Virus record (IMG/VR): IMGVR_UViG_3300048924_000191
Span: 124,001 to 188,000 of that record
DNA: 64,000 nt
Direction: 5' to 3' (one strand)
The number at the start of each line of letters is the position of its first letter. Positions within the stretch are counted from its first letter, which is position 1. The position numbers were made by a program, and so were the translations under genes. Under the pieces are notes generated by a model. It made no database searches and was not told the DNA's origin. It saw nothing but the letters and a program-made list of their open reading frames with translations. Positions 2,027 through 17,854 of this stretch are shown one piece after another.

Positions 2027-3286
2027 ATGAGCATCACGGGCGATCTGTCTCGGCGTTCCATCCAGCAATCTCAACAACTGTACCGCGACAATGCTGTCGC
2101 ACTAGGCAATGATGCTCTTACCGCCGAGATGGCGTCTTTCGAACACCTCCTTGATCGTCACCGCCGTGTGACTGAAGCGATGCGTTCGGTCGAAGACCTG
2201 ACTCGGATGTTCTTCAGTCAGCACCGTCTCGGTGTACCGATCGAACAAGCCAAGATGTACGAGTTCTCGGTCGAGTCGATTATCCGCGCCACTGGCGAGG
2301 AATTCCCACACGACATGCACGAACTCTCTTTCGAGTCGTCTTACGACTACTCGACTGAAGCTGAGTCGAAGGTCGGCAGTTCCCTGAAGAAGGTCGGCGC
2401 TTGGTTGATGGAAATCCTCACCAAGATCGCAGAAGGTCTCAAGGGTATCCTCACCAAGTTCACCACTTCCGTTCAAGGCAACAAACGCAAGCTGGAAGAA
2501 CGTCTTGCTCAGATGCGTGCCAAGGGCAGTAAGAAAGAAGGTGGCGAGAAGGACGACAAGGAACCCAAGCCAAGTACCGAGGCTAAGGGCCGTGCAATCG
2601 AAGTGCCAGACATCAAGATCCTAGGCGGCACTGGCGTACGTGTCGAAAACACCATCGACAAAGCCAACGCCAACACTCGTAAGGGTGGTCAGGATCTGCT
2701 GGGTATTGTGCGGGCATGTGGTGAAGCAGCCAAACGCTTCAATCCTTCGCAACACACCAGCAAGGACGGCCTGGATGACTTCATGAAAGACATCATGTTG
2801 TCGGTAGGGATGAAGACCGATGGCGGTAATGGTCATCGTGAGTTCCTCATCGTAAACGGTACTGGCGTCGAGATCACCTTCAACCGTAAGTCTGACGCAA
2901 CAGTCTCTGCCAAAGCTGGCAAGATCGCTTACGAGAAGAAGTCTGGTGAGATGCCTGGTCTGGATGAGGGCGAAGCCATGAAGTTGCTCGAGCACCTGAT
3001 TGAGTCGTACAACCAGATCGATAGTCTGCGTAAACCGCTCGACACCGTCTCCACCGTCTTTGGTCAATTGGCCAAGTCGATGAACGACGCGTACCGAGCT
3101 ACGCTGAACTCTCTGGCAGGCGCCGATAAGGACGCTGCCGATAAAGCTACTCAATCGAGCCGCGTGTACTCCACTCTGGGCCACGTCATGGCGACTCTGG
3201 GTCAGCTGCCGTCTAACCTGCTGAGTGGCTACCTCCAGGTTCACTACGCCGCCGACAACTACGCCGACAAAGCGTCTCGCGGTTAA
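2027..3286 (+). CDS. Internal head (inner body/ejection) protein, phiKZ internal-protein paralog family
   Basis: LSFESSYDYSTEAE prohead-protease motif followed by amphipathic helix (LKKVGAWLMEILTKI); similar layout to 3311, 4730 and 15974. Confidence 0.7.
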   Translation: MSITGDLSRRSIQQSQQLYRDNAVALGNDALTAEMASFEHLLDRHRRVTEAMRSVEDLTRMFFSQHRLGVPIEQAKMYEFSVESIIRATGEEFPHDMHELSFESSYDYSTEAESKVGSSLKKVGAWLMEILTKIAEGLKGILTKFTTSVQGNKRKLEERLAQMRAKGSKKEGGEKDDKEPKPSTEAKGRAIEVPDIKILGGTGVRVENTIDKANANTRKGGQDLLGIVRACGEAAKRFNPSQHTSKDGLDDFMKDIMLSVGMKTDGGNGHREFLIVNGTGVEITFNRKSDATVSAKAGKIAYEKKSGEMPGLDEGEAMKLLEHLIESYNQIDSLRKPLDTVSTVFGQLAKSMNDAYRATLNSLAGADKDAADKATQSSRVYSTLGHVMATLGQLPSNLLSGYLQVHYAADNYADKASRG

Positions 3287-3310
3287 TCACTCCTCATCAA
3301 GGAACAACAC

Positions 3311-4714
3311 ATGAGCACCATTTCTGAAGCACTGGCCAAACGCAACATGGCTGGCGGTACTGGTATCCGCGATACCCTCAGTCTGGAATCGGCCGCAGTG
3401 GACGCACGCGACGAAGTCGTAGGTCACATCGAAGGCCTGCATGAAATCGCCGCACAGATCGCCAAAGAAGGCGAGGATATCACCACCGGCACGTTGCTGG
3501 CGGACAACATCGACACGCTGGTCGATAACACCATCCAGGCTTACAAAGAAGGCGGTGTGGACGAGCGTGGTGCTGACCTGCTGGAAGTATCGATCGAATG
3601 TCTGATCCGTGCAACCAACCTGCCTCTGCATTATCGCGCCGTTGTACCTTCGTTCGAATCTGTTGCGCGACGTGAAGACTACTCGACCGAAGCCGAGAAG
3701 AAGAAAGACGGTTTCCTCTCCCGTCTGTTCACCATGCTGCGTGAAGCGCTGGCACGTCTCGGTTCTATTGTTCGTAGCTTCGTCGCTCGCATGCGCAAAA
3801 CCAGCGGTTCGCTGGAAAGCTACATCAAGTCGGTGAAGGCGCGTGCTGATCGTCTGCAAGGTGCCAGCAAAGGCGGTAAGGTCAAGATCGCCCAACAGGT
3901 GGCGTGGAACATGATCGACTTCGGTGGACATCTGCTGAAACCTGCCGACGCTATCGATCGCAACACCACTGCCTACGCTCGCTTCGTTGCCCAAGTGCAG
4001 AACGATCTCGGCAAGGTGACTCAGGTCGGTAAGCTGTCCACCACTCCTACCGACGCTGATGTCGATAAGTGGGTTAAGGAGCAGGCCGAAGGTCTGGGCG
4101 GTCACTACACCACCGGCCTGCCGCATTTGGTAAACGTGGCCTTCCTGCCGACCTGGAAGTTCAACATCAAGCACACTGCTGGTGTCGGTCGCGAGCACGG
4201 TGCCAACATCAAGAACAACCCGCTGATCGGCGCCAAGGCCGAAGTGTTCATGGAACACCAGGGCACTACCCCTACCGAGGCCGATGCACTGTCGGTGGCG
4301 GAAATCCATGCAACTGTCGACAAGGCTCTGCATGCGCTGTCGAACATCCAGCAAGTCGAGAAGAAAATAGACGCCTGGGTCACCAACAGCGATACCGCTG
4401 TACGCATCCTGACCAACATCTCCAAGTTCTTGGAGAGCAAAGAAATCAAGATGCCTGGCCACGACGATACCGTCCGCGCCATCAAGTCGCTCATGGCGGC
4501 GAACAACCTCTACTCCCAGGCATACACCCTGACGCTGCCGCACGCGATCACCATGATCCGTACCAACGTCTCGTTCGCCGACCGCTGCATCAGTCTGATC
4601 TCTCACGGCGAGCTCAAAGAAGTGAATGCCAACCAACACAAACTCCTGGGTCACTCCCCAGCGGCCAAGGCCGAGCCTGAGCACGAGTACGCCCACTTCG
4701 AGCCGGTTCACTGA
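3311..4714 (+). CDS. Internal head protein paralog
   Basis: PSFESVARREDYSTEAE then GFLSRLFTMLREAL; SD AAGGAA; strong codon bias. Confidence 0.75.
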   Translation: MSTISEALAKRNMAGGTGIRDTLSLESAAVDARDEVVGHIEGLHEIAAQIAKEGEDITTGTLLADNIDTLVDNTIQAYKEGGVDERGADLLEVSIECLIRATNLPLHYRAVVPSFESVARREDYSTEAEKKKDGFLSRLFTMLREALARLGSIVRSFVARMRKTSGSLESYIKSVKARADRLQGASKGGKVKIAQQVAWNMIDFGGHLLKPADAIDRNTTAYARFVAQVQNDLGKVTQVGKLSTTPTDADVDKWVKEQAEGLGGHYTTGLPHLVNVAFLPTWKFNIKHTAGVGREHGANIKNNPLIGAKAEVFMEHQGTTPTEADALSVAEIHATVDKALHALSNIQQVEKKIDAWVTNSDTAVRILTNISKFLESKEIKMPGHDDTVRAIKSLMAANNLYSQAYTLTLPHAITMIRTNVSFADRCISLISHGELKEVNANQHKLLGHSPAAKAEPEHEYAHFEPVH

Positions 4715-13093: not shown

Positions 13094-14386
13094 TCAGTCC
13101 TGGAAGACGGACTCTTCTACCAGCGTGAGGACGGCGTCCAAACGAGCGAGCAGGTCGGCTTGCAGACGACTCAGACGATCGCAGATGCGACCGATCTCAC
13201 TCACCAGTTGGGACTCCAGACGCAGCAGGTCAGCGGTGTTGATATCGCTGTCCAGTTCGTAGTCGTATTCGACCTCGACGTCGTCAGTCGACATGTTGGT
13301 CAACTTCTTGATGGTCACACCGACGCTGGCGTAAGACACCTTGACGGCGTCCGACACTTTCTCCAGCAAACGGATCTGTTCGCCAATCACCCGATCCAAC
13401 TCCTGACAGTATTGCAGGATGGTTTCGGTAGACAGGGATTTGATCTGATCGGTGTACTTGACCACGTCGGTAGCCAACGTGCCATCTTGTTGCAGGTGGA
13501 ACGCCATCAGGCGACCCATACGCTCTTCGTTGCGGGCGTACTTGACGTTACCCAGCAGCGGGAGTGGTTGGGCCTTGATAGCCGCATCCAGGCGCTGGAA
13601 CAGATCGTCCTGCTGGATACCTGCGAACAGGTCATGCGGAAGATCTTGCGCGCTGATAGCCTGCACCAAATGCGTCTTGACCGTGTGGTCACAACGACGG
13701 TGGTATTCCATCACGATGTCGGTCAGGGTACGACTGGTTGTGGCGAACGCAGTCAGGTCGTGAGTCGGTGCCTGAGAGTAGTTACTCCCATTGACCAGTA
13801 ACTCAAGAACCTTTTGCGGGAGACGGATGTCTACACCACCACTGCCTTTGCGAGACCGCACCTTGTCGCGAACACGACGGGTACGATTCTGAAGACCGAC
13901 GGTGCTTTGGTTCAGACGAACGAACGACAGTGCCAAACGACCACCGGTGCGAGCAGCGGCGGCGGAGAACGCTTTCACAGCAGAACCGAACCAATCGGAC
14001 AGCGACTCCAGCGACACTTCATCAACACCGCCGTCACTCCCCATGGCAAGCTTGGGGATGGTGGTCTCCAAGACTTGTTCTGCGGTGGCGATGTTCATGT
14101 TAGCCGTAGCGACGAAAGCATCAGCAGCAGCGGCTGGCATGTCTTCAGCGGCTTTGGCAGCGGCACCGATAGCGGTAACCACAGCAGCACCGGCTTCCAT
14201 GTCCTTGGCCGAATTGTTCGTCTGGACTTCGTGCAGAGCTTCAGCCATCTCACTGCGTTCTTCGCGCGCTTCTTGCACGTCTTCGACAGTGAGTTCGTGG
14301 GAGGGTGGTGGGATCACCACTTCGGAGGCTTCGAGCGAGAGTTTACCGCGCAACGCCTCTTGCAGAGTAGTTTTGAATACAGACAT
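13094..14386 (-). CDS. Internal head protein (phiKZ gp92-97 cluster-like)
   Basis: LSLEA and VSLES sites; Ala/Glu-rich propeptide. Confidence 0.6.
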   Translation of the reverse strand: MSVFKTTLQEALRGKLSLEASEVVIPPPSHELTVEDVQEAREERSEMAEALHEVQTNNSAKDMEAGAAVVTAIGAAAKAAEDMPAAAADAFVATANMNIATAEQVLETTIPKLAMGSDGGVDEVSLESLSDWFGSAVKAFSAAAARTGGRLALSFVRLNQSTVGLQNRTRRVRDKVRSRKGSGGVDIRLPQKVLELLVNGSNYSQAPTHDLTAFATTSRTLTDIVMEYHRRCDHTVKTHLVQAISAQDLPHDLFAGIQQDDLFQRLDAAIKAQPLPLLGNVKYARNEERMGRLMAFHLQQDGTLATDVVKYTDQIKSLSTETILQYCQELDRVIGEQIRLLEKVSDAVKVSYASVGVTIKKLTNMSTDDVEVEYDYELDSDINTADLLRLESQLVSEIGRICDRLSRLQADLLARLDAVLTLVEESVFQD

Positions 14387-14389
14387 GGA

Positions 14390-15556
14390 TCACCTGTAGG
14401 TTTTAATGGAGGCGTAGCAGTATTGAATCGCAGCGCGGCAGACCGACATCGAGTGGATCAGCAGCGAACGGGTGGGTTGTTGCAACCAGTGCGTGAGGGT
14501 GTTCACCGTCTTGCGCACTGCGTCCATGTCAGACGGAGCGAAGGAGCTCGTCTTCAGGAACGTATCCAACGAGGTACGCGAACGGTTAGCCGCTGCACGT
14601 ACACCGGAGTTACTGGACTTGGAGATGTCGTCCAACAGACTGCGGATCACTTTCGGCAGTTCGCCGATCTGACCAGGCTGAAGAGTAGTCAACGTATATT
14701 CACGTTGAACCTTCAGTTCGTTCCGACCAGTCTTCTCGAAGAGGAATCCGTGGAAGCGGAACGCGTCGATACCACGCTCACGCAGATCACCGCGTAGGTA
14801 GAACAAACTCATCCCACCCAGCAGGGAAGGAGTAGCCTGAACATTGTTGCGCTTGAAGCGATCGTACGGCGCTGCGTGCATACCGCACTGAGATGCCATC
14901 TTGTCGAACGGGATCTTGGTGATCACAGCTACCATGGCATCAGTCAGTACCTTACCGGTCTTACCACGAGCTGCGGCTTGCAGTTCAGCAGACGCGTCGA
15001 TGACTTCCTTACGGTAGTCCATCGCCATGACCTTGACCACATTGTGCAGCTGATGGATTTGAGACTCGAGCTTACCAGCGTCGTCGATCTGGATACCGTG
15101 CACACGCATGTACCGACCGATACGACCCAACTCAACGGTAGGTTCGCTAGGACGCATGCCTTTGGTGGTAGCCACCTGACGTTCCAGGAAACTCAGTTTA
15201 CGCGAGAGCCACGTAGCGGCAAGGTCGATGTTCGAGAAGAAGTCGAGCAATGCCTTGAAGAACTGTTGGAGCGCACTGATGGCAGCACGGACTACCGACG
15301 CCGCTACCGTCTTGACCGACTCCACGCTGATCTCATCCAAGGACCAGCAGTGACCGATCTCACCCGTGACTGCCGTCATCAAAGGACGGGCAGATGCTTC
15401 GAACGAAGCCTTGGGCATTTCACCGGCTTGACTGAGCAAGTCTTCAAACGCGGTGTGGGAATTCATGAATCGAGAGAAAGCTTCGAACGCGATCGTAACT
15501 TCGTGATCCGCTCTTACCAGCTCCTCGAAAGGATCTTCTTCCAGCAGCAAGTCCAT
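14390..15556 (-). CDS. Internal head protein (phiKZ gp92-97 cluster-like)
   Basis: AFE, SFE and SVE sites, then helix ALQQFFKALLDFF; LLGG motif. Confidence 0.65.
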   Translation of the reverse strand: MDLLLEEDPFEELVRADHEVTIAFEAFSRFMNSHTAFEDLLSQAGEMPKASFEASARPLMTAVTGEIGHCWSLDEISVESVKTVAASVVRAAISALQQFFKALLDFFSNIDLAATWLSRKLSFLERQVATTKGMRPSEPTVELGRIGRYMRVHGIQIDDAGKLESQIHQLHNVVKVMAMDYRKEVIDASAELQAAARGKTGKVLTDAMVAVITKIPFDKMASQCGMHAAPYDRFKRNNVQATPSLLGGMSLFYLRGDLRERGIDAFRFHGFLFEKTGRNELKVQREYTLTTLQPGQIGELPKVIRSLLDDISKSSNSGVRAAANRSRTSLDTFLKTSSFAPSDMDAVRKTVNTLTHWLQQPTRSLLIHSMSVCRAAIQYCYASIKTYR

Positions 15557-15598: not shown

Positions 15599-15631
15599 GC
15601 ATAAAGCGGGAGCCGAAGCCCCCGCTTTATG
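15599..15631. terminator. Hairpin flanked by CATA/TATG
   Basis: GCATAAAGCGGG-AGCCGAAGCC-CCCGCTTTATG. Confidence 0.8.
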
Positions 15632-15644
15632 TTTTACGGCCTGA

Positions 15645-15977
15645 CTATTTCTTCTTCAGATAATCGTGGACCTCAACCAGATGGTTGAACCGTTTCTCCG
15701 AGAAGTTAGTCTTCAGGTAGACTTCCTGAAGGTGGAAGTAGTCCTCATTCCATTTCGACTTATCCGTTTCCAATTCGCGGGCGAAGGATTTCTCTTCGTA
15801 CGGTTGCCACAGGTCTTTGACCTGTTTGGCCGCGGCGCGAGCCGTCGCTTTGATATCGGCACCGGAAAGCTTGGAATTATTGAACTCCAACCGCAAGGCA
15901 GTTCTGACGAGGAGGGCGTCCGACTTCCCCGACTTATATTCACGAATGAATTTGTCGACGTTGTCGGACCCAGTCAG
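15645..15977 (-). CDS. 110-aa C-terminal extension, predicted to be reached by -1 frameshift from the upstream head protein
   Basis: Frame is -1 relative to 15974..17278, open across its stop, has no ATG, and is entered at G_GGA_AAC. Confidence 0.7.
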   Translation of the reverse strand: MTGSDNVDKFIREYKSGKSDALLVRTALRLEFNNSKLSGADIKATARAAAKQVKDLWQPYEEKSFARELETDKSKWNEDYFHLQEVYLKTNFSEKRFNHLVEVHDYLKKK

Positions 15978-17278
15978 TTTCCCGCAGCACCTTTGTCGTC
16001 GGCGGCAGCCGGTTCTTCCTTCGCCTTGGCACCGTGGGCACCCAGGGAGGCTTTACCGAAGTTGTAGGCATCTTTACCCAGCTGCGACAGGTAGTTGACG
16101 TAGGTCGGAACCACGCCTTCGCCGGCCTTGATGATGCGGGCAGCGGTGGTAACGACTTTCGCCACGCCTTGACGCTTGGCTTTGGCATCGTCGCCTTCGG
16201 TCTTGTTGGCGGCCGCTTGGGCAGCTTTCATGACCTTCTCGGCGTCGTCCAGGTACTTCTCGGCTTTCGCCTCGGCCAGCTTCATGCGGCGACCCAGGGT
16301 CACCAGCTTACCGCCCAGAGCGGAAACTTCCGAAGGAGACAGCGGAGCGGTCTTCTCGGCGCCTGGAGAAGGCTTGGTGACGTTGAAGGTGATCTTGTCG
16401 CCGTTCAGCTTCAGCTCGGCCTTCACGCCGCCTGGCAGTTCGATGGAAGTATCGCGCAGACCCATGGAGGCGAACTTGGCTTGCCAGTTGGCATCGGTCA
16501 GGTCGTTGGCACCGACGTCGCCTTTCAGCGCGGCAACAACAGGCTGCAGGACCTTCTTCATCGGCTCGACCACCTTGGAGGTGAACTCGCCGTCGAAGAC
16601 CTGGAGGGCCTTGTCGATCGCTTGGCCAGGATTACCGCCCAGACGACCGTAACCGGTGGTCTTCAGTTCGGTTTTCTTGGCTTCGCCTTTGGTCTTGGAA
16701 GCCAGACGCTGCAGTTGCTGACCGCCGGTCACGATGGCGTCGGCGGAACGACCCATGGTGCCGAAGAACTGCTTGATGCTGGTGCGAGCGGAGTTGAAAG
16801 CCTGGACCAGAACTTTCCACAGACGGGACAGAACGCCCTCGGTCTTCTCTTCAGCTTCGGTGGTGTAGTCTTCCACCTGAGCCGATTCGAAGCTGTGTTG
16901 CATGGCCATGACTTCATCACGGACCAGGGACGACGGCAGCTCGCGAGCTTCTACCGACAGGGCAACGTTCTGGATGTACCAGCGCATACCGCTGTTGTCC
17001 AGAGGTTGACCGCCAGCGGCCATAGCGCGCAGTTGAGCCAGGTTGCTTTCCAGCGAGTCGACGGCTTCGGCGACTTTCTCGGCAGCAACGTCCGAGGCTT
17101 GCATCTTCTCGACCTTCTCGGCGGTGTCGGCGATGGCCTCTTCCAGCTCGGTGGCGGTCTCGTCGGTGACGACGGTGATTTCCTCGGCACCGAGGTAGCT
17201 GTGATCTTCATCGGACTCAGGCGCTACCGCACCCGATTCGACCGACAGCTGGTTCAACATTTTAGCGAGTTCGCTCAT
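15974..17278 (-). CDS. Abundant internal head protein, phiKZ gp93-family
   Basis: HSFESAQVEDYTTEAE, GVLSRLWKVL, LPGG; AGGAG SD; very strong codon bias. Confidence 0.75.
   Translation of the reverse strand: MSELAKMLNQLSVESGAVAPESDEDHSYLGAEEITVVTDETATELEEAIADTAEKVEKMQASDVAAEKVAEAVDSLESNLAQLRAMAAGGQPLDNSGMRWYIQNVALSVEARELPSSLVRDEVMAMQHSFESAQVEDYTTEAEEKTEGVLSRLWKVLVQAFNSARTSIKQFFGTMGRSADAIVTGGQQLQRLASKTKGEAKKTELKTTGYGRLGGNPGQAIDKALQVFDGEFTSKVVEPMKKVLQPVVAALKGDVGANDLTDANWQAKFASMGLRDTSIELPGGVKAELKLNGDKITFNVTKPSPGAEKTAPLSPSEVSALGGKLVTLGRRMKLAEAKAEKYLDDAEKVMKAAQAAANKTEGDDAKAKRQGVAKVVTTAARIIKAGEGVVPTYVNYLSQLGKDAYNFGKASLGAHGAKAKEEPAAADDKGAAGN
15977..15983 (-). other. -1 ribosomal frameshift slippery heptamer G_GGA_AAC
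   Basis: GCG GGA AAC TGA: correctly phased X_XXY_YYZ directly before the stop. Confidence 0.72.
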
Positions 17279-17338
17279 CTTGGTATTGCTCCTAGGCAAA
17301 TTGAACGTCGGTATGCAAGCCGACGGCGTATACGCACA

Positions 17339-17854
17339 TTATTGCAATGGAGGCGCGACTGTACGGTCACCCACATAGAGTTCTAGGGATGCGGACAGGT
17401 CGTCGACACCGGCGACCGTAACCCACAGCTGGATCAAGGCTTCCGGCGTATACTGCGCCAATTCTTCAACCGCTTGCCGTTCGATGTCAGTAAACGAAGG
17501 TAGGCGGGTCTGCACCACACTATCCTGTTTGATCATCAGCGCCCGATCCTGGAAACAGATACGACGACGCGTGATGTTCTTCATCAGGAACATGGCGGTT
17601 TCGGCAATGAACGACTGAACGTTATTGCCAATGCGGCAGGCTGGGTCGAGTGCTGCGCGGAAGAAACCGTTGGTGTACTTCCACTCTTTCGACAGCACCG
17701 CGATCTGAGCGAGTTCTACATCGAAGGTCGGACGGGTCTGCCCCGAACGCTGACGGTAGATGTCACTCACCCTGGGCGATTCATAGACCGACCCCAGGGT
17801 GGGAACAGCAGCGATCAACGTCGGAAACCCACGGTGGGTATAGATGACGTTCAT
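17339..17854 (-). CDS. Virion protein, phiKZ gp91-like
   Basis: Synteny; ATGA overlap with upstream gene. Confidence 0.5.
   Translation of the reverse strand: MNVIYTHRGFPTLIAAVPTLGSVYESPRVSDIYRQRSGQTRPTFDVELAQIAVLSKEWKYTNGFFRAALDPACRIGNNVQSFIAETAMFLMKNITRRRICFQDRALMIKQDSVVQTRLPSFTDIERQAVEELAQYTPEALIQLWVTVAGVDDLSASLELYVGDRTVAPPLQ

What the first reader, a model, noticed from the sequence alone, without database searches (positions are those of the whole stretch)
15645..17278. Programmed -1 frameshift (G_GGA_AAC) predicted to give a major internal head protein a 110-aa C-terminal extension
Seen: the gene ends GCG GGA AAC TGA, a correctly phased X_XXY_YYZ heptamer abutting the stop. The -1 frame continues LTGSDNVDKFIREYKSGKSDALLVRTALRLEFNN...KSKWNEDYFHLQEVYLKTNFSEKRFNHLVEVHDYLKKK and stops just before the terminator at 15599-15631. 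That frame has no ATG and only a late TTG without a clear SD. A small CGAC-aac-GTCG hairpin follows the slip site. Established: G_GGA_AAC is a known -1 slippery site, and T7 10A/10B-type frameshifts append domains to virion proteins. Inference: a fraction of this abundant, probably injected protein carries an extra helical domain, a way to deliver a low-copy cargo into the host at infection. The WxxDYF..NFS..R..HL.EV pattern looks like a bacterial protein family to me, but I cannot confirm that.
Basis: partly seen in the sequence, partly recalled or inferred. Interest (0 to 1): 0.85.

Follow-up and report, generated by a model that had tools for sequence, protein, structure and literature searches.

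The report
Frameshift-extended jumbo-phage internal head protein
A giant phage from root metagenomes very probably uses a ribosome slip at the end of an internal head protein gene to give some copies an extra 110-residue domain, and that domain's only bacterial relatives are membrane-anchored proteins encoded beside a dynamin-like GTPase.

Summary
A 434-aa PF12699 (phiKZ_IP) gene on the minus strand (17278..15974) ends GCG GGA AAC TGA. The -1 frame then runs 110 codons to TAG at 15647..15645, and its only canonical start is a TTG at codon 28.

The interpretation, a -1 programmed frameshift, is strongly supported by comparison with relatives:
- Eight of ten related junctions (five of seven lineages) carry an in-phase slippery heptamer in the few codons where a shift can work. 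They are G_GGA_AAC, C_CCA_AAG, G_GGA_AAG (twice) and A_AAA_AAG.
- No such heptamer occurs in 14,994 codons of neighbouring genes.
- The 27 codons before the TTG are under purifying selection and form part of a confidently predicted fold.
- A hairpin starting 6-8 nt after the heptamer is kept by compensatory changes.
- In other internal head protein subfamilies the same domain is fused in frame.
- Independent assemblies rule out an assembly error.

Exceptions: one relative has a GTG start instead, and one may use UGA readthrough.

The appended domain has no Pfam family and no solved-structure match. Its bacterial homologues are tandem-repeat, tail-anchored proteins that always lie next to a dynamin-like GTPase gene.

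The mechanism is a canonical one in a gene family where I found no earlier report. No protein-level evidence exists.

The parts
15974..17278 (-). Internal head protein gene (434 aa, 0 frame), member of PF12699 phiKZ_IP. It ends ...GCG GGA AAC TGA.
   Evidence: The identical 434-aa protein cluster is P0001. Orthologues at 51-68% identity lie in the same gene order.
15977..15983 (-). Slippery heptamer G_GGA_AAC in X_XXY_YYZ phase. It covers the last two sense codons and is followed directly by TGA (15976..15974).
   Evidence: It is invariant in L007, L010, L011 and L016, while the upstream tail and the preceding codon's amino acid vary. A published prediction has the same GGGAAAC+TGA arrangement in Burkholderia phage KL1 gp18/gp19 (PMC3483164).
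15915..15971 (-). Predicted extended hairpin starting 6-8 nt 3' of the heptamer, the candidate frameshift stimulator. The core 7-bp stem pairs 15969..15963 with 15924..15918.
   Evidence: RNAalifold predicts it independently. The core stem is 100% paired in 4 distinct sequences, with 3 pairs changed on both sides; 9 of 500 shuffles reach this, and slid controls reach at most 50% paired. Minimum free energy is -24 to -33 kcal/mol over 70 nt, with z from -2.4 to -5.7 against mononucleotide shuffles.
15645..15977 (-). -1 frame ORF of 110 codons plus TAG. It encodes a five-helix domain with no family name, and the domain's conserved N-terminal helix starts at codon 5.
   Evidence: AlphaFold2 gives pLDDT 96.1 and pTM 0.88, with helix 5-15 part of the fold. 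There are 209 homologues at E<=1e-3. dN/dS for codons 2-27 is 0.07-0.41, and the other two frames contain stops in relatives.
15894..15896 (-). The only canonical start codon (TTG) in the -1 ORF, at codon 28. It lies inside the conserved domain, so it is not the real start.
   Evidence: (R25 is invariant and lies upstream of it).
15601..15630 (-). Conserved GC-rich hairpin followed by TTTAT, terminator-like. It closes the transcription unit of the internal head protein gene plus extension.
   Evidence: In relatives without the extension ORF the same hairpin follows the internal head protein stop directly. The consensus scan did not flag it because it has fewer than 5 T.
14390..15556 (-). Next internal head protein paralogue (388 aa, PF12699). 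Given as context only; it is not part of the recoding unit.
   Evidence: A third, weak PF12699 paralogue lies at 13094..14386.

Best explanation
A canonical -1 programmed ribosomal frameshift.

Proposed mechanism: ribosomes translating the internal head protein mRNA reach G_GGA_AAC with tRNA-Gly in the P site and tRNA-Asn in the A site. A fraction slips back one base to GGG AAA. The slip is helped by the hairpin 6-8 nt downstream and probably by the adjacent UGA. Those ribosomes then read CTG ACT GGG... for 110 more codons. Two products result from one mRNA: the 434-aa protein and a 544-aa protein carrying a C-terminal five-helix domain.

Shown here: the heptamer and its phase; the absence of a start codon; protein-level constraint on the codons before the only start; conservation or replacement of slippery heptamers across lineages; a covarying downstream stem; and natural in-frame fusions of the same domain to other PF12699 proteins.

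Inferred: that the fusion is actually made, and that it is the minor product. My guess from the site type is a few per cent to a few tens of per cent. It is also inferred that the internal head protein part carries the domain into the capsid, and that the domain is ejected into the cell with the DNA.

The domain's function is unknown. Its bacterial homologues are always paired with a dynamin-like GTPase, which suggests it binds that GTPase or the membrane.
For: 1. Junction survey. In-phase heptamers lie inside the short region where the -1 frame is open and the 0 frame has not yet stopped:
- G_GGA_AAC+TGA in the window, L007, L010 and L011. L016 is the same phage from a second metagenome.
- C_CCA_AAG in L014, where the -1 frame opens exactly at the heptamer.
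- G_GGA_AAG in L033 and L051.
- A_AAA_AAG+TAA in L035.
The last three types are the ones the Atkins review calls most shift-prone in E. coli (PMC5009743).
2. Background. There are 0 X_XXA_AAG/C heptamers in 14,994 codons of 42 neighbouring genes, and X_XXA_AAN runs at 3.1e-4 per codon in the window. My arithmetic: about 0.03 expected in about 90 permitted codons across 7 lineages, against 5 lineages observed, which is P of order 1e-10.
3. No ATG, GTG or TTG precedes the conserved N-terminal helix in the window, L007, L010, L011, L014, L034 or L035. L014 has no near-cognate start there either (my reading).
4. dN/dS for the pre-TTG codons is 0.07-0.41. Helix 5-15 is modelled at pLDDT above 90.
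5. The hairpin shows compensatory, non-synonymous double changes.
6. In-frame PF12699+domain fusions exist: P0043, P0063, P0088, P0058, P0055, P0067, P0079, P0081, P0087, and L015 and L026.
7. Relatives without the extension ORF (L006, L009, L012) also lack the heptamer and the ...GN tail.
8. No indel appears at the junction in four independent runs.
9. Phage 0305phi8-36 gp205, which ends in this domain, is annotated as a low-copy virion protein found by mass spectrometry.
Against: - There is no protein, ribosome-profiling or reporter evidence. All loci come from uncultured phages.
- According to the review read, A_AAA_AAC is much less shift-prone than A_AAA_AAG in E. coli. G_GGA_AAC may therefore be inefficient, depending on the unknown host's tRNA-Asn.
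- L008 has two substitutions that destroy the heptamer and create a GTG with a GAGGGG Shine-Dalgarno at exactly the position of the window's CTG. The domain can evidently be expressed alone, and NTG overlapping the stop (NTGA) is a classical coupling arrangement.
- L034, a true orthologue, has only GCA AAG TAA, which is not a full heptamer.
- Covariation rests on 4 distinct sequences.
- Downstream structures in L014 and L035 are not at the ideal spacing.
Confidence: 0.85

Rival explanations
1. The downstream ORF is a separate gene. It would be translated by termination-reinitiation or coupling at the CTG (15977..15975) that overlaps the internal head protein stop (CTGA), giving a free 110-aa protein.
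For: In L008 the same position is a GTG overlapping the stop (GTGA), preceded by GAGGGG, and the gene caller took it as a 115-aa gene. The domain occurs as the repeat unit of stand-alone bacterial proteins.
Against: - CTG is a very poor bacterial start (general knowledge). There is no Shine-Dalgarno at proper spacing in the window, L007 or L010.
- L014 and L035 have no ATG, GTG, TTG or CTG before the conserved helix, so this cannot be the general solution.
- It does not explain why four different canonical heptamers sit in phase at these junctions while being absent from 14,994 background codons.
- It does not explain why the third-position G before GGA is kept while the amino acid changes.
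- In other lineages the domain is covalently fused to internal head proteins.
Confidence: 0.08
2. The arrangement is a decaying remnant. An ancestral in-frame fusion suffered a 1-nt frameshift mutation, and the extension is no longer expressed.
For: In-frame fusions exist in other internal head protein subfamilies. Several close relatives have lost the extension ORF altogether (L006, L009, L012).
Against: The ORF stays open with dN/dS well below 1 across genomes whose dS is 0.6 to above 1. The -1 arrangement is shared by orthologues as distant as L014, L033 and L034, and each but L034 has a different canonical heptamer. The conserved RNA stem is kept by compensatory changes. A strain with 22 differences in the internal head protein body has none in the junction and the first half of the extension.
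Confidence: 0.04
3. Assembly or sequencing error (a lost or gained base in GGG or AAA), or transcriptional slippage by RNA polymerase rather than ribosomal slippage.
For: Short homopolymers are present at the site. L035 has six consecutive A.
Against: The same sequence appears in contigs of four independent runs from four studies with no indel, in L016, and in three other genomes assembled elsewhere. Runs of three G or three A are too short for known transcriptional slippage, which needs longer homopolymers (general knowledge).
Confidence: 0.01

Closest known systems
Phage T7/T3 gene 10A/10B capsid protein frameshift
   Same: A -1 frameshift in the last codons of a virion protein gene gives a minor product with a C-terminal extension from one mRNA. 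T3 uses C_CCA_AAG (my own knowledge), which is the heptamer found in L014.
   Different: There the protein is the major capsid shell protein and the extension is short and dispensable. Here the carrier is a PF12699 internal head protein, and the extension is an independently folding domain of about 105 aa with bacterial homologues.
Tail assembly chaperone G/GT-type frameshift (lambda G_GGA_AAG; Burkholderia phage KL1 gp18/gp19 GGGAAAC directly before TGA, PMC3483164)
   Same: The same heptamers are used. In KL1 the arrangement is identical: GGGAAAC abutting a TGA stop. The shift is conserved across lineages while the site sequence and position drift.
   Different: Those genes lie upstream of the tape-measure gene and the products are assembly chaperones that are not in the virion. 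The genes flanking this one are internal head protein paralogues, and a head-tail joining gene lies about 5 kb away. The product is presumably packaged.
Domains (for example Ig-like) added to phage structural proteins by programmed frameshift (my own knowledge: Fraser et al. 2006)
   Same: A modular accessory domain is appended to a structural protein. In some phages this is by in-frame fusion and in others by a -1 frameshift.
   Different: Those domains decorate the outside of the virion. This one is attached to an internal, presumably ejected protein and is all-helical, with no solved-structure match.
Bacillus phage 0305phi8-36 gp205, Edwardsiella phage pEt-SU gp029, Kosakonia phage Kc263 QYN80000
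   Same: These are the only cultured-phage proteins that carry the same domain, always at the C-terminus (Foldseek TM 0.79-0.86). gp205 is a mass-spectrometry-verified low-copy virion protein.
   Different: The domain is fused in frame to carriers that are not annotated as internal head proteins (I did not scan them against Pfam). No frameshift is involved.
E. coli RdcA (YjdA/CrfC) - RdcB (YjcZ) dynamin-like GTPase pair
   Same: The gene order is analogous to that of the bacterial homologues of the extension: a dynamin-like GTPase of about 700-750 aa, followed on the same strand by a partner of about 295 aa.
   Different: RdcB/YjcZ (PF13990) is not detectably homologous to the extension domain (BLASTP E 0.95; hhalign probability 0.1%).

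Membership tests
-1 programmed ribosomal frameshift site | Heptamer X_XXY_YYZ in phase with the upstream (0) frame | tested here: met
   G_GGA_AAC at 15983..15977, in phase.
-1 programmed ribosomal frameshift site | The -1 ORF is open across the site, is coding, and has no initiation signal of its own | tested here: met
   It is open from 25 codons upstream. The first ATG, GTG or TTG is at codon 28, inside the fold. dN/dS for codons 2-27 is 0.07-0.41.
-1 programmed ribosomal frameshift site | Stimulatory RNA structure 5-9 nt downstream of the heptamer | tested here: met
   The predicted hairpin starts 6-8 nt downstream, and 3 pairs of the 7-bp core stem have compensatory changes. This is computational only, from 4 distinct sequences.
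-1 programmed ribosomal frameshift site | The shift site is conserved, or replaced by another slippery site, in relatives | tested here: met
   8 of 10 junctions and 5 of 7 lineages have an X_XXA_AAG/C heptamer, against 0 in 14,994 background codons. The exceptions are L008 (GTG start) and L034 (A_AAG+TAA only).
-1 programmed ribosomal frameshift site | The trans-frame protein is demonstrated | not testable with these tools
   All loci are metagenomic. The only RNA-labelled run among those listed held a fifth of the sampled words, and I did not lay it on the window. There are no proteomic data.
phiKZ-like internal head proteins (Pfam PF12699) | Score above the Pfam gathering threshold over most of the model | tested here: met
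   53.1 bits against 27, covering model positions 5-379 of 387. There is also a PHROG 2497 'internal head protein' hit at E 0.0024.
phiKZ-like internal head proteins (Pfam PF12699) | Located inside the capsid, processed by the prohead protease, and ejected | not testable with these tools
   This follows only from family membership. 'Major' and 'abundant' are untested.
T7 10A/10B-type capsid extension | The carrier is the major capsid (shell) protein | tested here: not met
   The carrier is PF12699, not a capsid fold family. It works like 10A/10B but is not a member.
Tail assembly chaperone G/GT frameshift | The gene pair lies immediately upstream of the tape-measure gene | tested here: not met
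   The genes immediately flanking it are an internal head protein paralogue on one side and small proteins without a Pfam match on the other. A head-tail joining gene lies about 5 kb away.
YjcZ/RdcB (PF13990), as the identity of the appended domain | Sequence or profile similarity to E. coli RdcB | tested here: not met
   BLASTP E 0.95 and hhalign probability 0.1%. RdcB itself hits PF13990 at 1e-143, while the domain family hits no Pfam model.

The most novel reading that the evidence does not exclude
The appended domain copies the repeat unit of a host tail-anchored membrane protein that works with a bacterial dynamin-like GTPase. These jumbo phages would load a tuned, sub-stoichiometric amount of it into the capsid on an internal head protein and eject it with the DNA. 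There it would engage or block the host dynamin-like machinery at the entry site, either to help build or protect the early membrane-bound infection compartment, or to disarm a dynamin-based membrane defence. Frameshift, possible UGA readthrough (L036), full fusion and a separate gene (L008) would be alternative ways of setting its dose.
Probability: 0.2. Interest if true: 0.85.

Novelty: new member of a known kind. Interest (0 to 1): 0.62.

Why it matters
Internal head (ejection) proteins of phiKZ-like jumbo phages are the first phage proteins to enter the cell, and most have no known function.

If the frameshift is real, it has three consequences:
- Gene calls for this gene pair are systematically wrong in metagenomic jumbo phages. 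The domain is called as truncated ORFs of 67-101 aa, or not called at all.
- One internal head protein exists in two forms at a ratio set by translation.
- The minor form carries a domain whose only cellular relatives are partners of a bacterial dynamin-like GTPase. That gives a concrete, testable handle on what an ejected protein does, and on an uncharacterised bacterial two-gene module.

The set of lineages also offers a natural series for studying how frameshift sites drift while the recoding event is kept. It includes four heptamers, a possible readthrough, in-frame fusions and a separate gene.

Tried and rejected
- Megablast of the region against 50,697 phage records found no match. The phage has no close cultured relative; the best internal head protein hit is 24.7% identical, in pPa_SNUABM_DT01.
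- Pfam, PHROGs, NCBIfam and PADLOC on the extension gave only sub-threshold noise. The protein-atlas search gave unnamed clusters only.
- Foldseek of the high-confidence model against the PDB gave nothing below E 4 and TM of at most 0.34.
- Homology of the domain to E. coli RdcB/YjcZ was rejected.
- The bacterial dynamin-like neighbour as a known defence protein: a weak LeoBC hit in 1 of 3 proteins, so not established.
It overlaps the 5' arm of the conserved stem, so I rejected it as the stimulator.
- The window's 0 frame stays open for 86 codons after the TGA, but in L007 and L010 it closes after 26 and 5 codons. Readthrough in the window is therefore rejected.
- In-frame fusions as orthologues of this internal head protein: rejected. 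P0043 and the L015 protein belong to other PF12699 subfamilies.
- Extra IMG/VR scans with the L033, L034 and L035 extensions found no new loci.
- The consensus terminator and promoter scan did not flag the conserved hairpin and is uninformative for a phage with its own RNA polymerases.
- No tRNA genes are present in the window.
- Two literature searches found no paper on frameshifting in jumbo-phage internal head proteins. The library is incomplete, so this is absence of evidence only.
Full report
**What is there**

The window is part of IMGVR_UViG_3300048924_000191, a 243-kb uncultured phage. On the minus strand an ATG at 17278, preceded by AGGAG, opens a 434-codon gene that ends GCG GGA AAC TGA at 15974. 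The protein is a Pfam PF12699 'phiKZ-like internal head protein' (53.1 bits, cut-off 27).

It lies in a head-gene block with two further PF12699 paralogues (14390..15556 and, weakly, 13094..14386) and, about 5 kb away, a head-tail joining protein gene.

The heptamer GGGAAAC (15983..15977) is in X_XXY_YYZ phase and abuts the stop. The -1 frame reads CTG ACT GGG... for 110 codons to TAG at 15647..15645. A conserved GC-rich hairpin plus TTTAT follows. In that frame no ATG, GTG or TTG exists before the TTG at 15896, which is codon 28.

**The extension is a real, translated domain that starts at the slip site**

An exhaustive HMMER search found 209 homologues at E<=1e-3, 96 of them at E<=1e-10.

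- Alignments show that conservation begins at residue 4-5 (S-x-N-L-x-K-F-I...IRTALRLE), and the invariant R25 lies upstream of the TTG.
- AlphaFold2 on a 54-sequence alignment gives pLDDT 96.1 and pTM 0.88, with five helices. Helix 5-15 is part of the fold.
- Among the window's closest relatives, dN/dS for codons 2-27 is 0.07-0.41, while the two other frames carry stops.

Translation must therefore enter this frame at or before codon 4. The only routes are a -1 shift from the internal head protein gene or initiation at the CTG that overlaps the stop.

**Comparative test of the frameshift**

Orthologues of the internal head protein at 51-68% identity lie in the same gene order.

- Three of them (L006, L009, L012) have no extension. 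Their stop is followed directly by the terminator hairpin, and they have neither the heptamer nor the ...GN tail.
- L007, L011 and L010 have the extension in the -1 frame and the identical GGGAAAC TGA C. Their low-complexity tails differ, and the codon before GGA encodes Ala, Lys or Gln but always ends in G.

More distant loci use other heptamers:

| Locus | Junction |
|---|---|
| L014 | C_CCA_AAG, 8 codons before the stop; the -1 frame opens exactly at the heptamer |
| L033 | G_GGA_AAG, one codon before the stop |
| L035 (a different, 558-aa PF12699 paralogue) | A_AAA_AAG abutting TAA |
| L051 | G_GGA_AAG, 6 codons before the stop |

According to the Atkins review, these three AAG types are the most shift-prone in E. 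coli (PMC5009743). GGGAAAC directly before TGA is the predicted tail-chaperone shift site of Burkholderia phage KL1 (PMC3483164).

The background is very low. There are 0 X_XXA_AAG/C heptamers, and only 3 in-phase heptamers of any kind, in 14,994 codons of 42 neighbouring genes. X_XXA_AAN runs at 3.1e-4 per codon in a crude ORF set of the window. The permitted windows total about 90 codons over seven lineages, so about 0.03 sites are expected and five lineages have one. By my arithmetic the probability is of order 1e-10.

**RNA structure**

RNAalifold on five junctions predicts an extended hairpin beginning 6-8 nt after the heptamer.

- Its 7-bp core stem (15969..15963 with 15924..15918) is paired in all four distinct sequences.
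- Three of those pairs are changed on both sides. The changes alter the encoded amino acids: D to S in one arm and S to E in the other in L007. Protein constraint alone therefore does not explain them.
- 9 of 500 shuffles match this, and slid controls drop to 25-50% paired.
- Single-sequence folds give -24 to -33 kcal/mol over 70 nt.
- L033 has a comparable hairpin. L014 and L035 are less convincing.

**The domain is normally a C-terminal module of internal head proteins**

Ten proteins of 448-585 aa combine PF12699 with the domain at the extreme C-terminus in one frame. In one of them (P0095) the PF12699 match is below threshold. Two further fusions, L015 and L026, were confirmed on their contigs. 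These belong to other internal head protein subfamilies, so the domain is a mobile C-terminal module.

In cultured phages the domain occurs only at the C-terminus of pEt-SU gp029, Kc263 QYN80000 and 0305phi8-36 gp205. The last is annotated as a low-copy virion protein found by mass spectrometry.

**Exceptions and rivals**

- L008 carries GAG GGG AAG TGA. Two third-position changes remove the heptamer and create a GTG overlapping the stop, with a GAGGGG upstream. The domain is probably made separately there, which keeps the coupling-at-CTG rival alive for the window. That rival cannot explain L014 and L035, which have no ATG, GTG, TTG or CTG before the conserved helix. Nor can it explain the heptamer enrichment.
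- L034 is a true orthologue (hhalign 100%) with only GCA AAG TAA, an A_AAG next to a stop and not a full heptamer.
- In L036, a 38% GC lineage, the domain follows in the same frame after a TGA, the only TGA among eight called genes. Treating TGA as sense merges only this gene pair among the called genes, so leaky-stop readthrough is a lead rather than recoding of TGA across the contig. The upstream proteins of L036 and L051 could not be shown to be internal head proteins.
- Assembly error is excluded. Contigs from four runs in four studies show no indel or substitution between 15690 and 16187. L016 is identical in the extension.
- Decay of an old fusion is contradicted by the purifying selection and the conserved stem.

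**What the domain might do**

No Pfam, NCBIfam or PADLOC family matches it, and no PDB fold does.

Its bacterial homologues occur in Paraburkholderia, the Pseudomonas fluorescens group, Halomonas, Massilia and Pseudidiomarina. They are proteins of about 295 aa with two tandem copies, a proline-rich linker and a C-terminal transmembrane helix. In all 22 loci with enough flank, the gene lies directly downstream of a dynamin-like GTPase gene of about 700-790 aa on the same strand.

The layout recalls E. coli rdcA-rdcB, but RdcB is not homologous. The GTPase is not a curated defence protein. That the phage domain targets this machinery is a hypothesis only.

**Verdict**

I put the probability of a canonical -1 programmed frameshift that produces a 544-aa internal head protein isoform at about 0.85. 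The mechanism is known, and its use on a jumbo-phage internal head protein was not found in the literature searched. I therefore file it as a new member of a known kind. The cargo domain and its link to a bacterial dynamin-like module are the more novel part. No protein-level evidence exists yet.

Noticed in passing
L018-L032 and L038-L050 (bacterial loci), e.g. L042:354-2609 and the following gene at about 2620-3500: An uncharacterised two-gene module in Pseudomonadota. A dynamin-like GTPase of about 700-790 aa is followed directly by a protein of about 295 aa made of two copies of the extension domain, a Pro-rich linker and a C-terminal transmembrane helix. The pairing held in 22 of 22 loci with enough flank. 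The partner is not homologous to E. coli RdcB/YjcZ.
   Followed up: partly
L036:1316-2743: In a 38% GC phage contig the same domain follows a 370-aa gene in the same frame, after a single TGA (…GAA TGA AAG…). This is the only TGA stop among eight called genes. It is a candidate UGA readthrough that appends the domain. The upstream protein could not be shown to be an internal head protein.
   Followed up: partly
L008:4305-4320: Two third-position substitutions relative to the window clade (GGA to GGG, AAC to AAG) abolish the slippery heptamer. They also create a GTG start overlapping the stop, with a GAGGGG Shine-Dalgarno. This looks like a switch from frameshift fusion to a separately translated gene. 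The downstream hairpin is still kept.
   Followed up: partly
L034:2430-2450: A true orthologue of the window's internal head protein has the extension in the -1 frame with no start codon, but only GCA AAG TAA at the junction (A_AAG next to a stop, no full heptamer). No clear downstream hairpin is predicted.
   Followed up: partly
window 15821-16783 (run X10): A related strain differs at 22 positions in the internal head protein gene body (16187-16783) but at none in 15821-16186. That stretch holds the gene's end, the slip site, the hairpin and the start of the extension. The cause could be strong constraint or a recombination mosaic.
   Followed up: no
Neighbouring genes in L006-L012, L014, L033-L035: In-phase slippery heptamers are nearly absent from ordinary genes of these phages: 3 of any kind and 0 of the X_XXA_AAG/C kind in 14,994 codons. 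This suggests selection against accidental shift sites.
   Followed up: partly
window 15601-15630 and the equivalent sites in L006-L012: The terminator-like hairpin (GCGGGGGC-TTCG-GCTCCCGC followed by TTTAT) is nearly identical in all relatives. Where the extension ORF is absent, it follows the internal head protein stop within about 20-45 nt. The extension therefore behaves as a cassette lying between the stop and the terminator.
   Followed up: partly
window 15716-15973, minus strand, 0 frame: After the TGA the 0 frame stays open for 86 codons in the window. It closes after 26 and 5 codons in L007 and L010, so this looks accidental.
   Followed up: yes
window 16034-17386, plus strand: A 450-codon 'shadow' ORF on the opposite strand is longer than the real internal head protein gene. 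It displaced the real gene in a naive longest-ORF selection. This is a GC-rich codon-bias artefact to keep in mind for automatic annotation.
   Followed up: no
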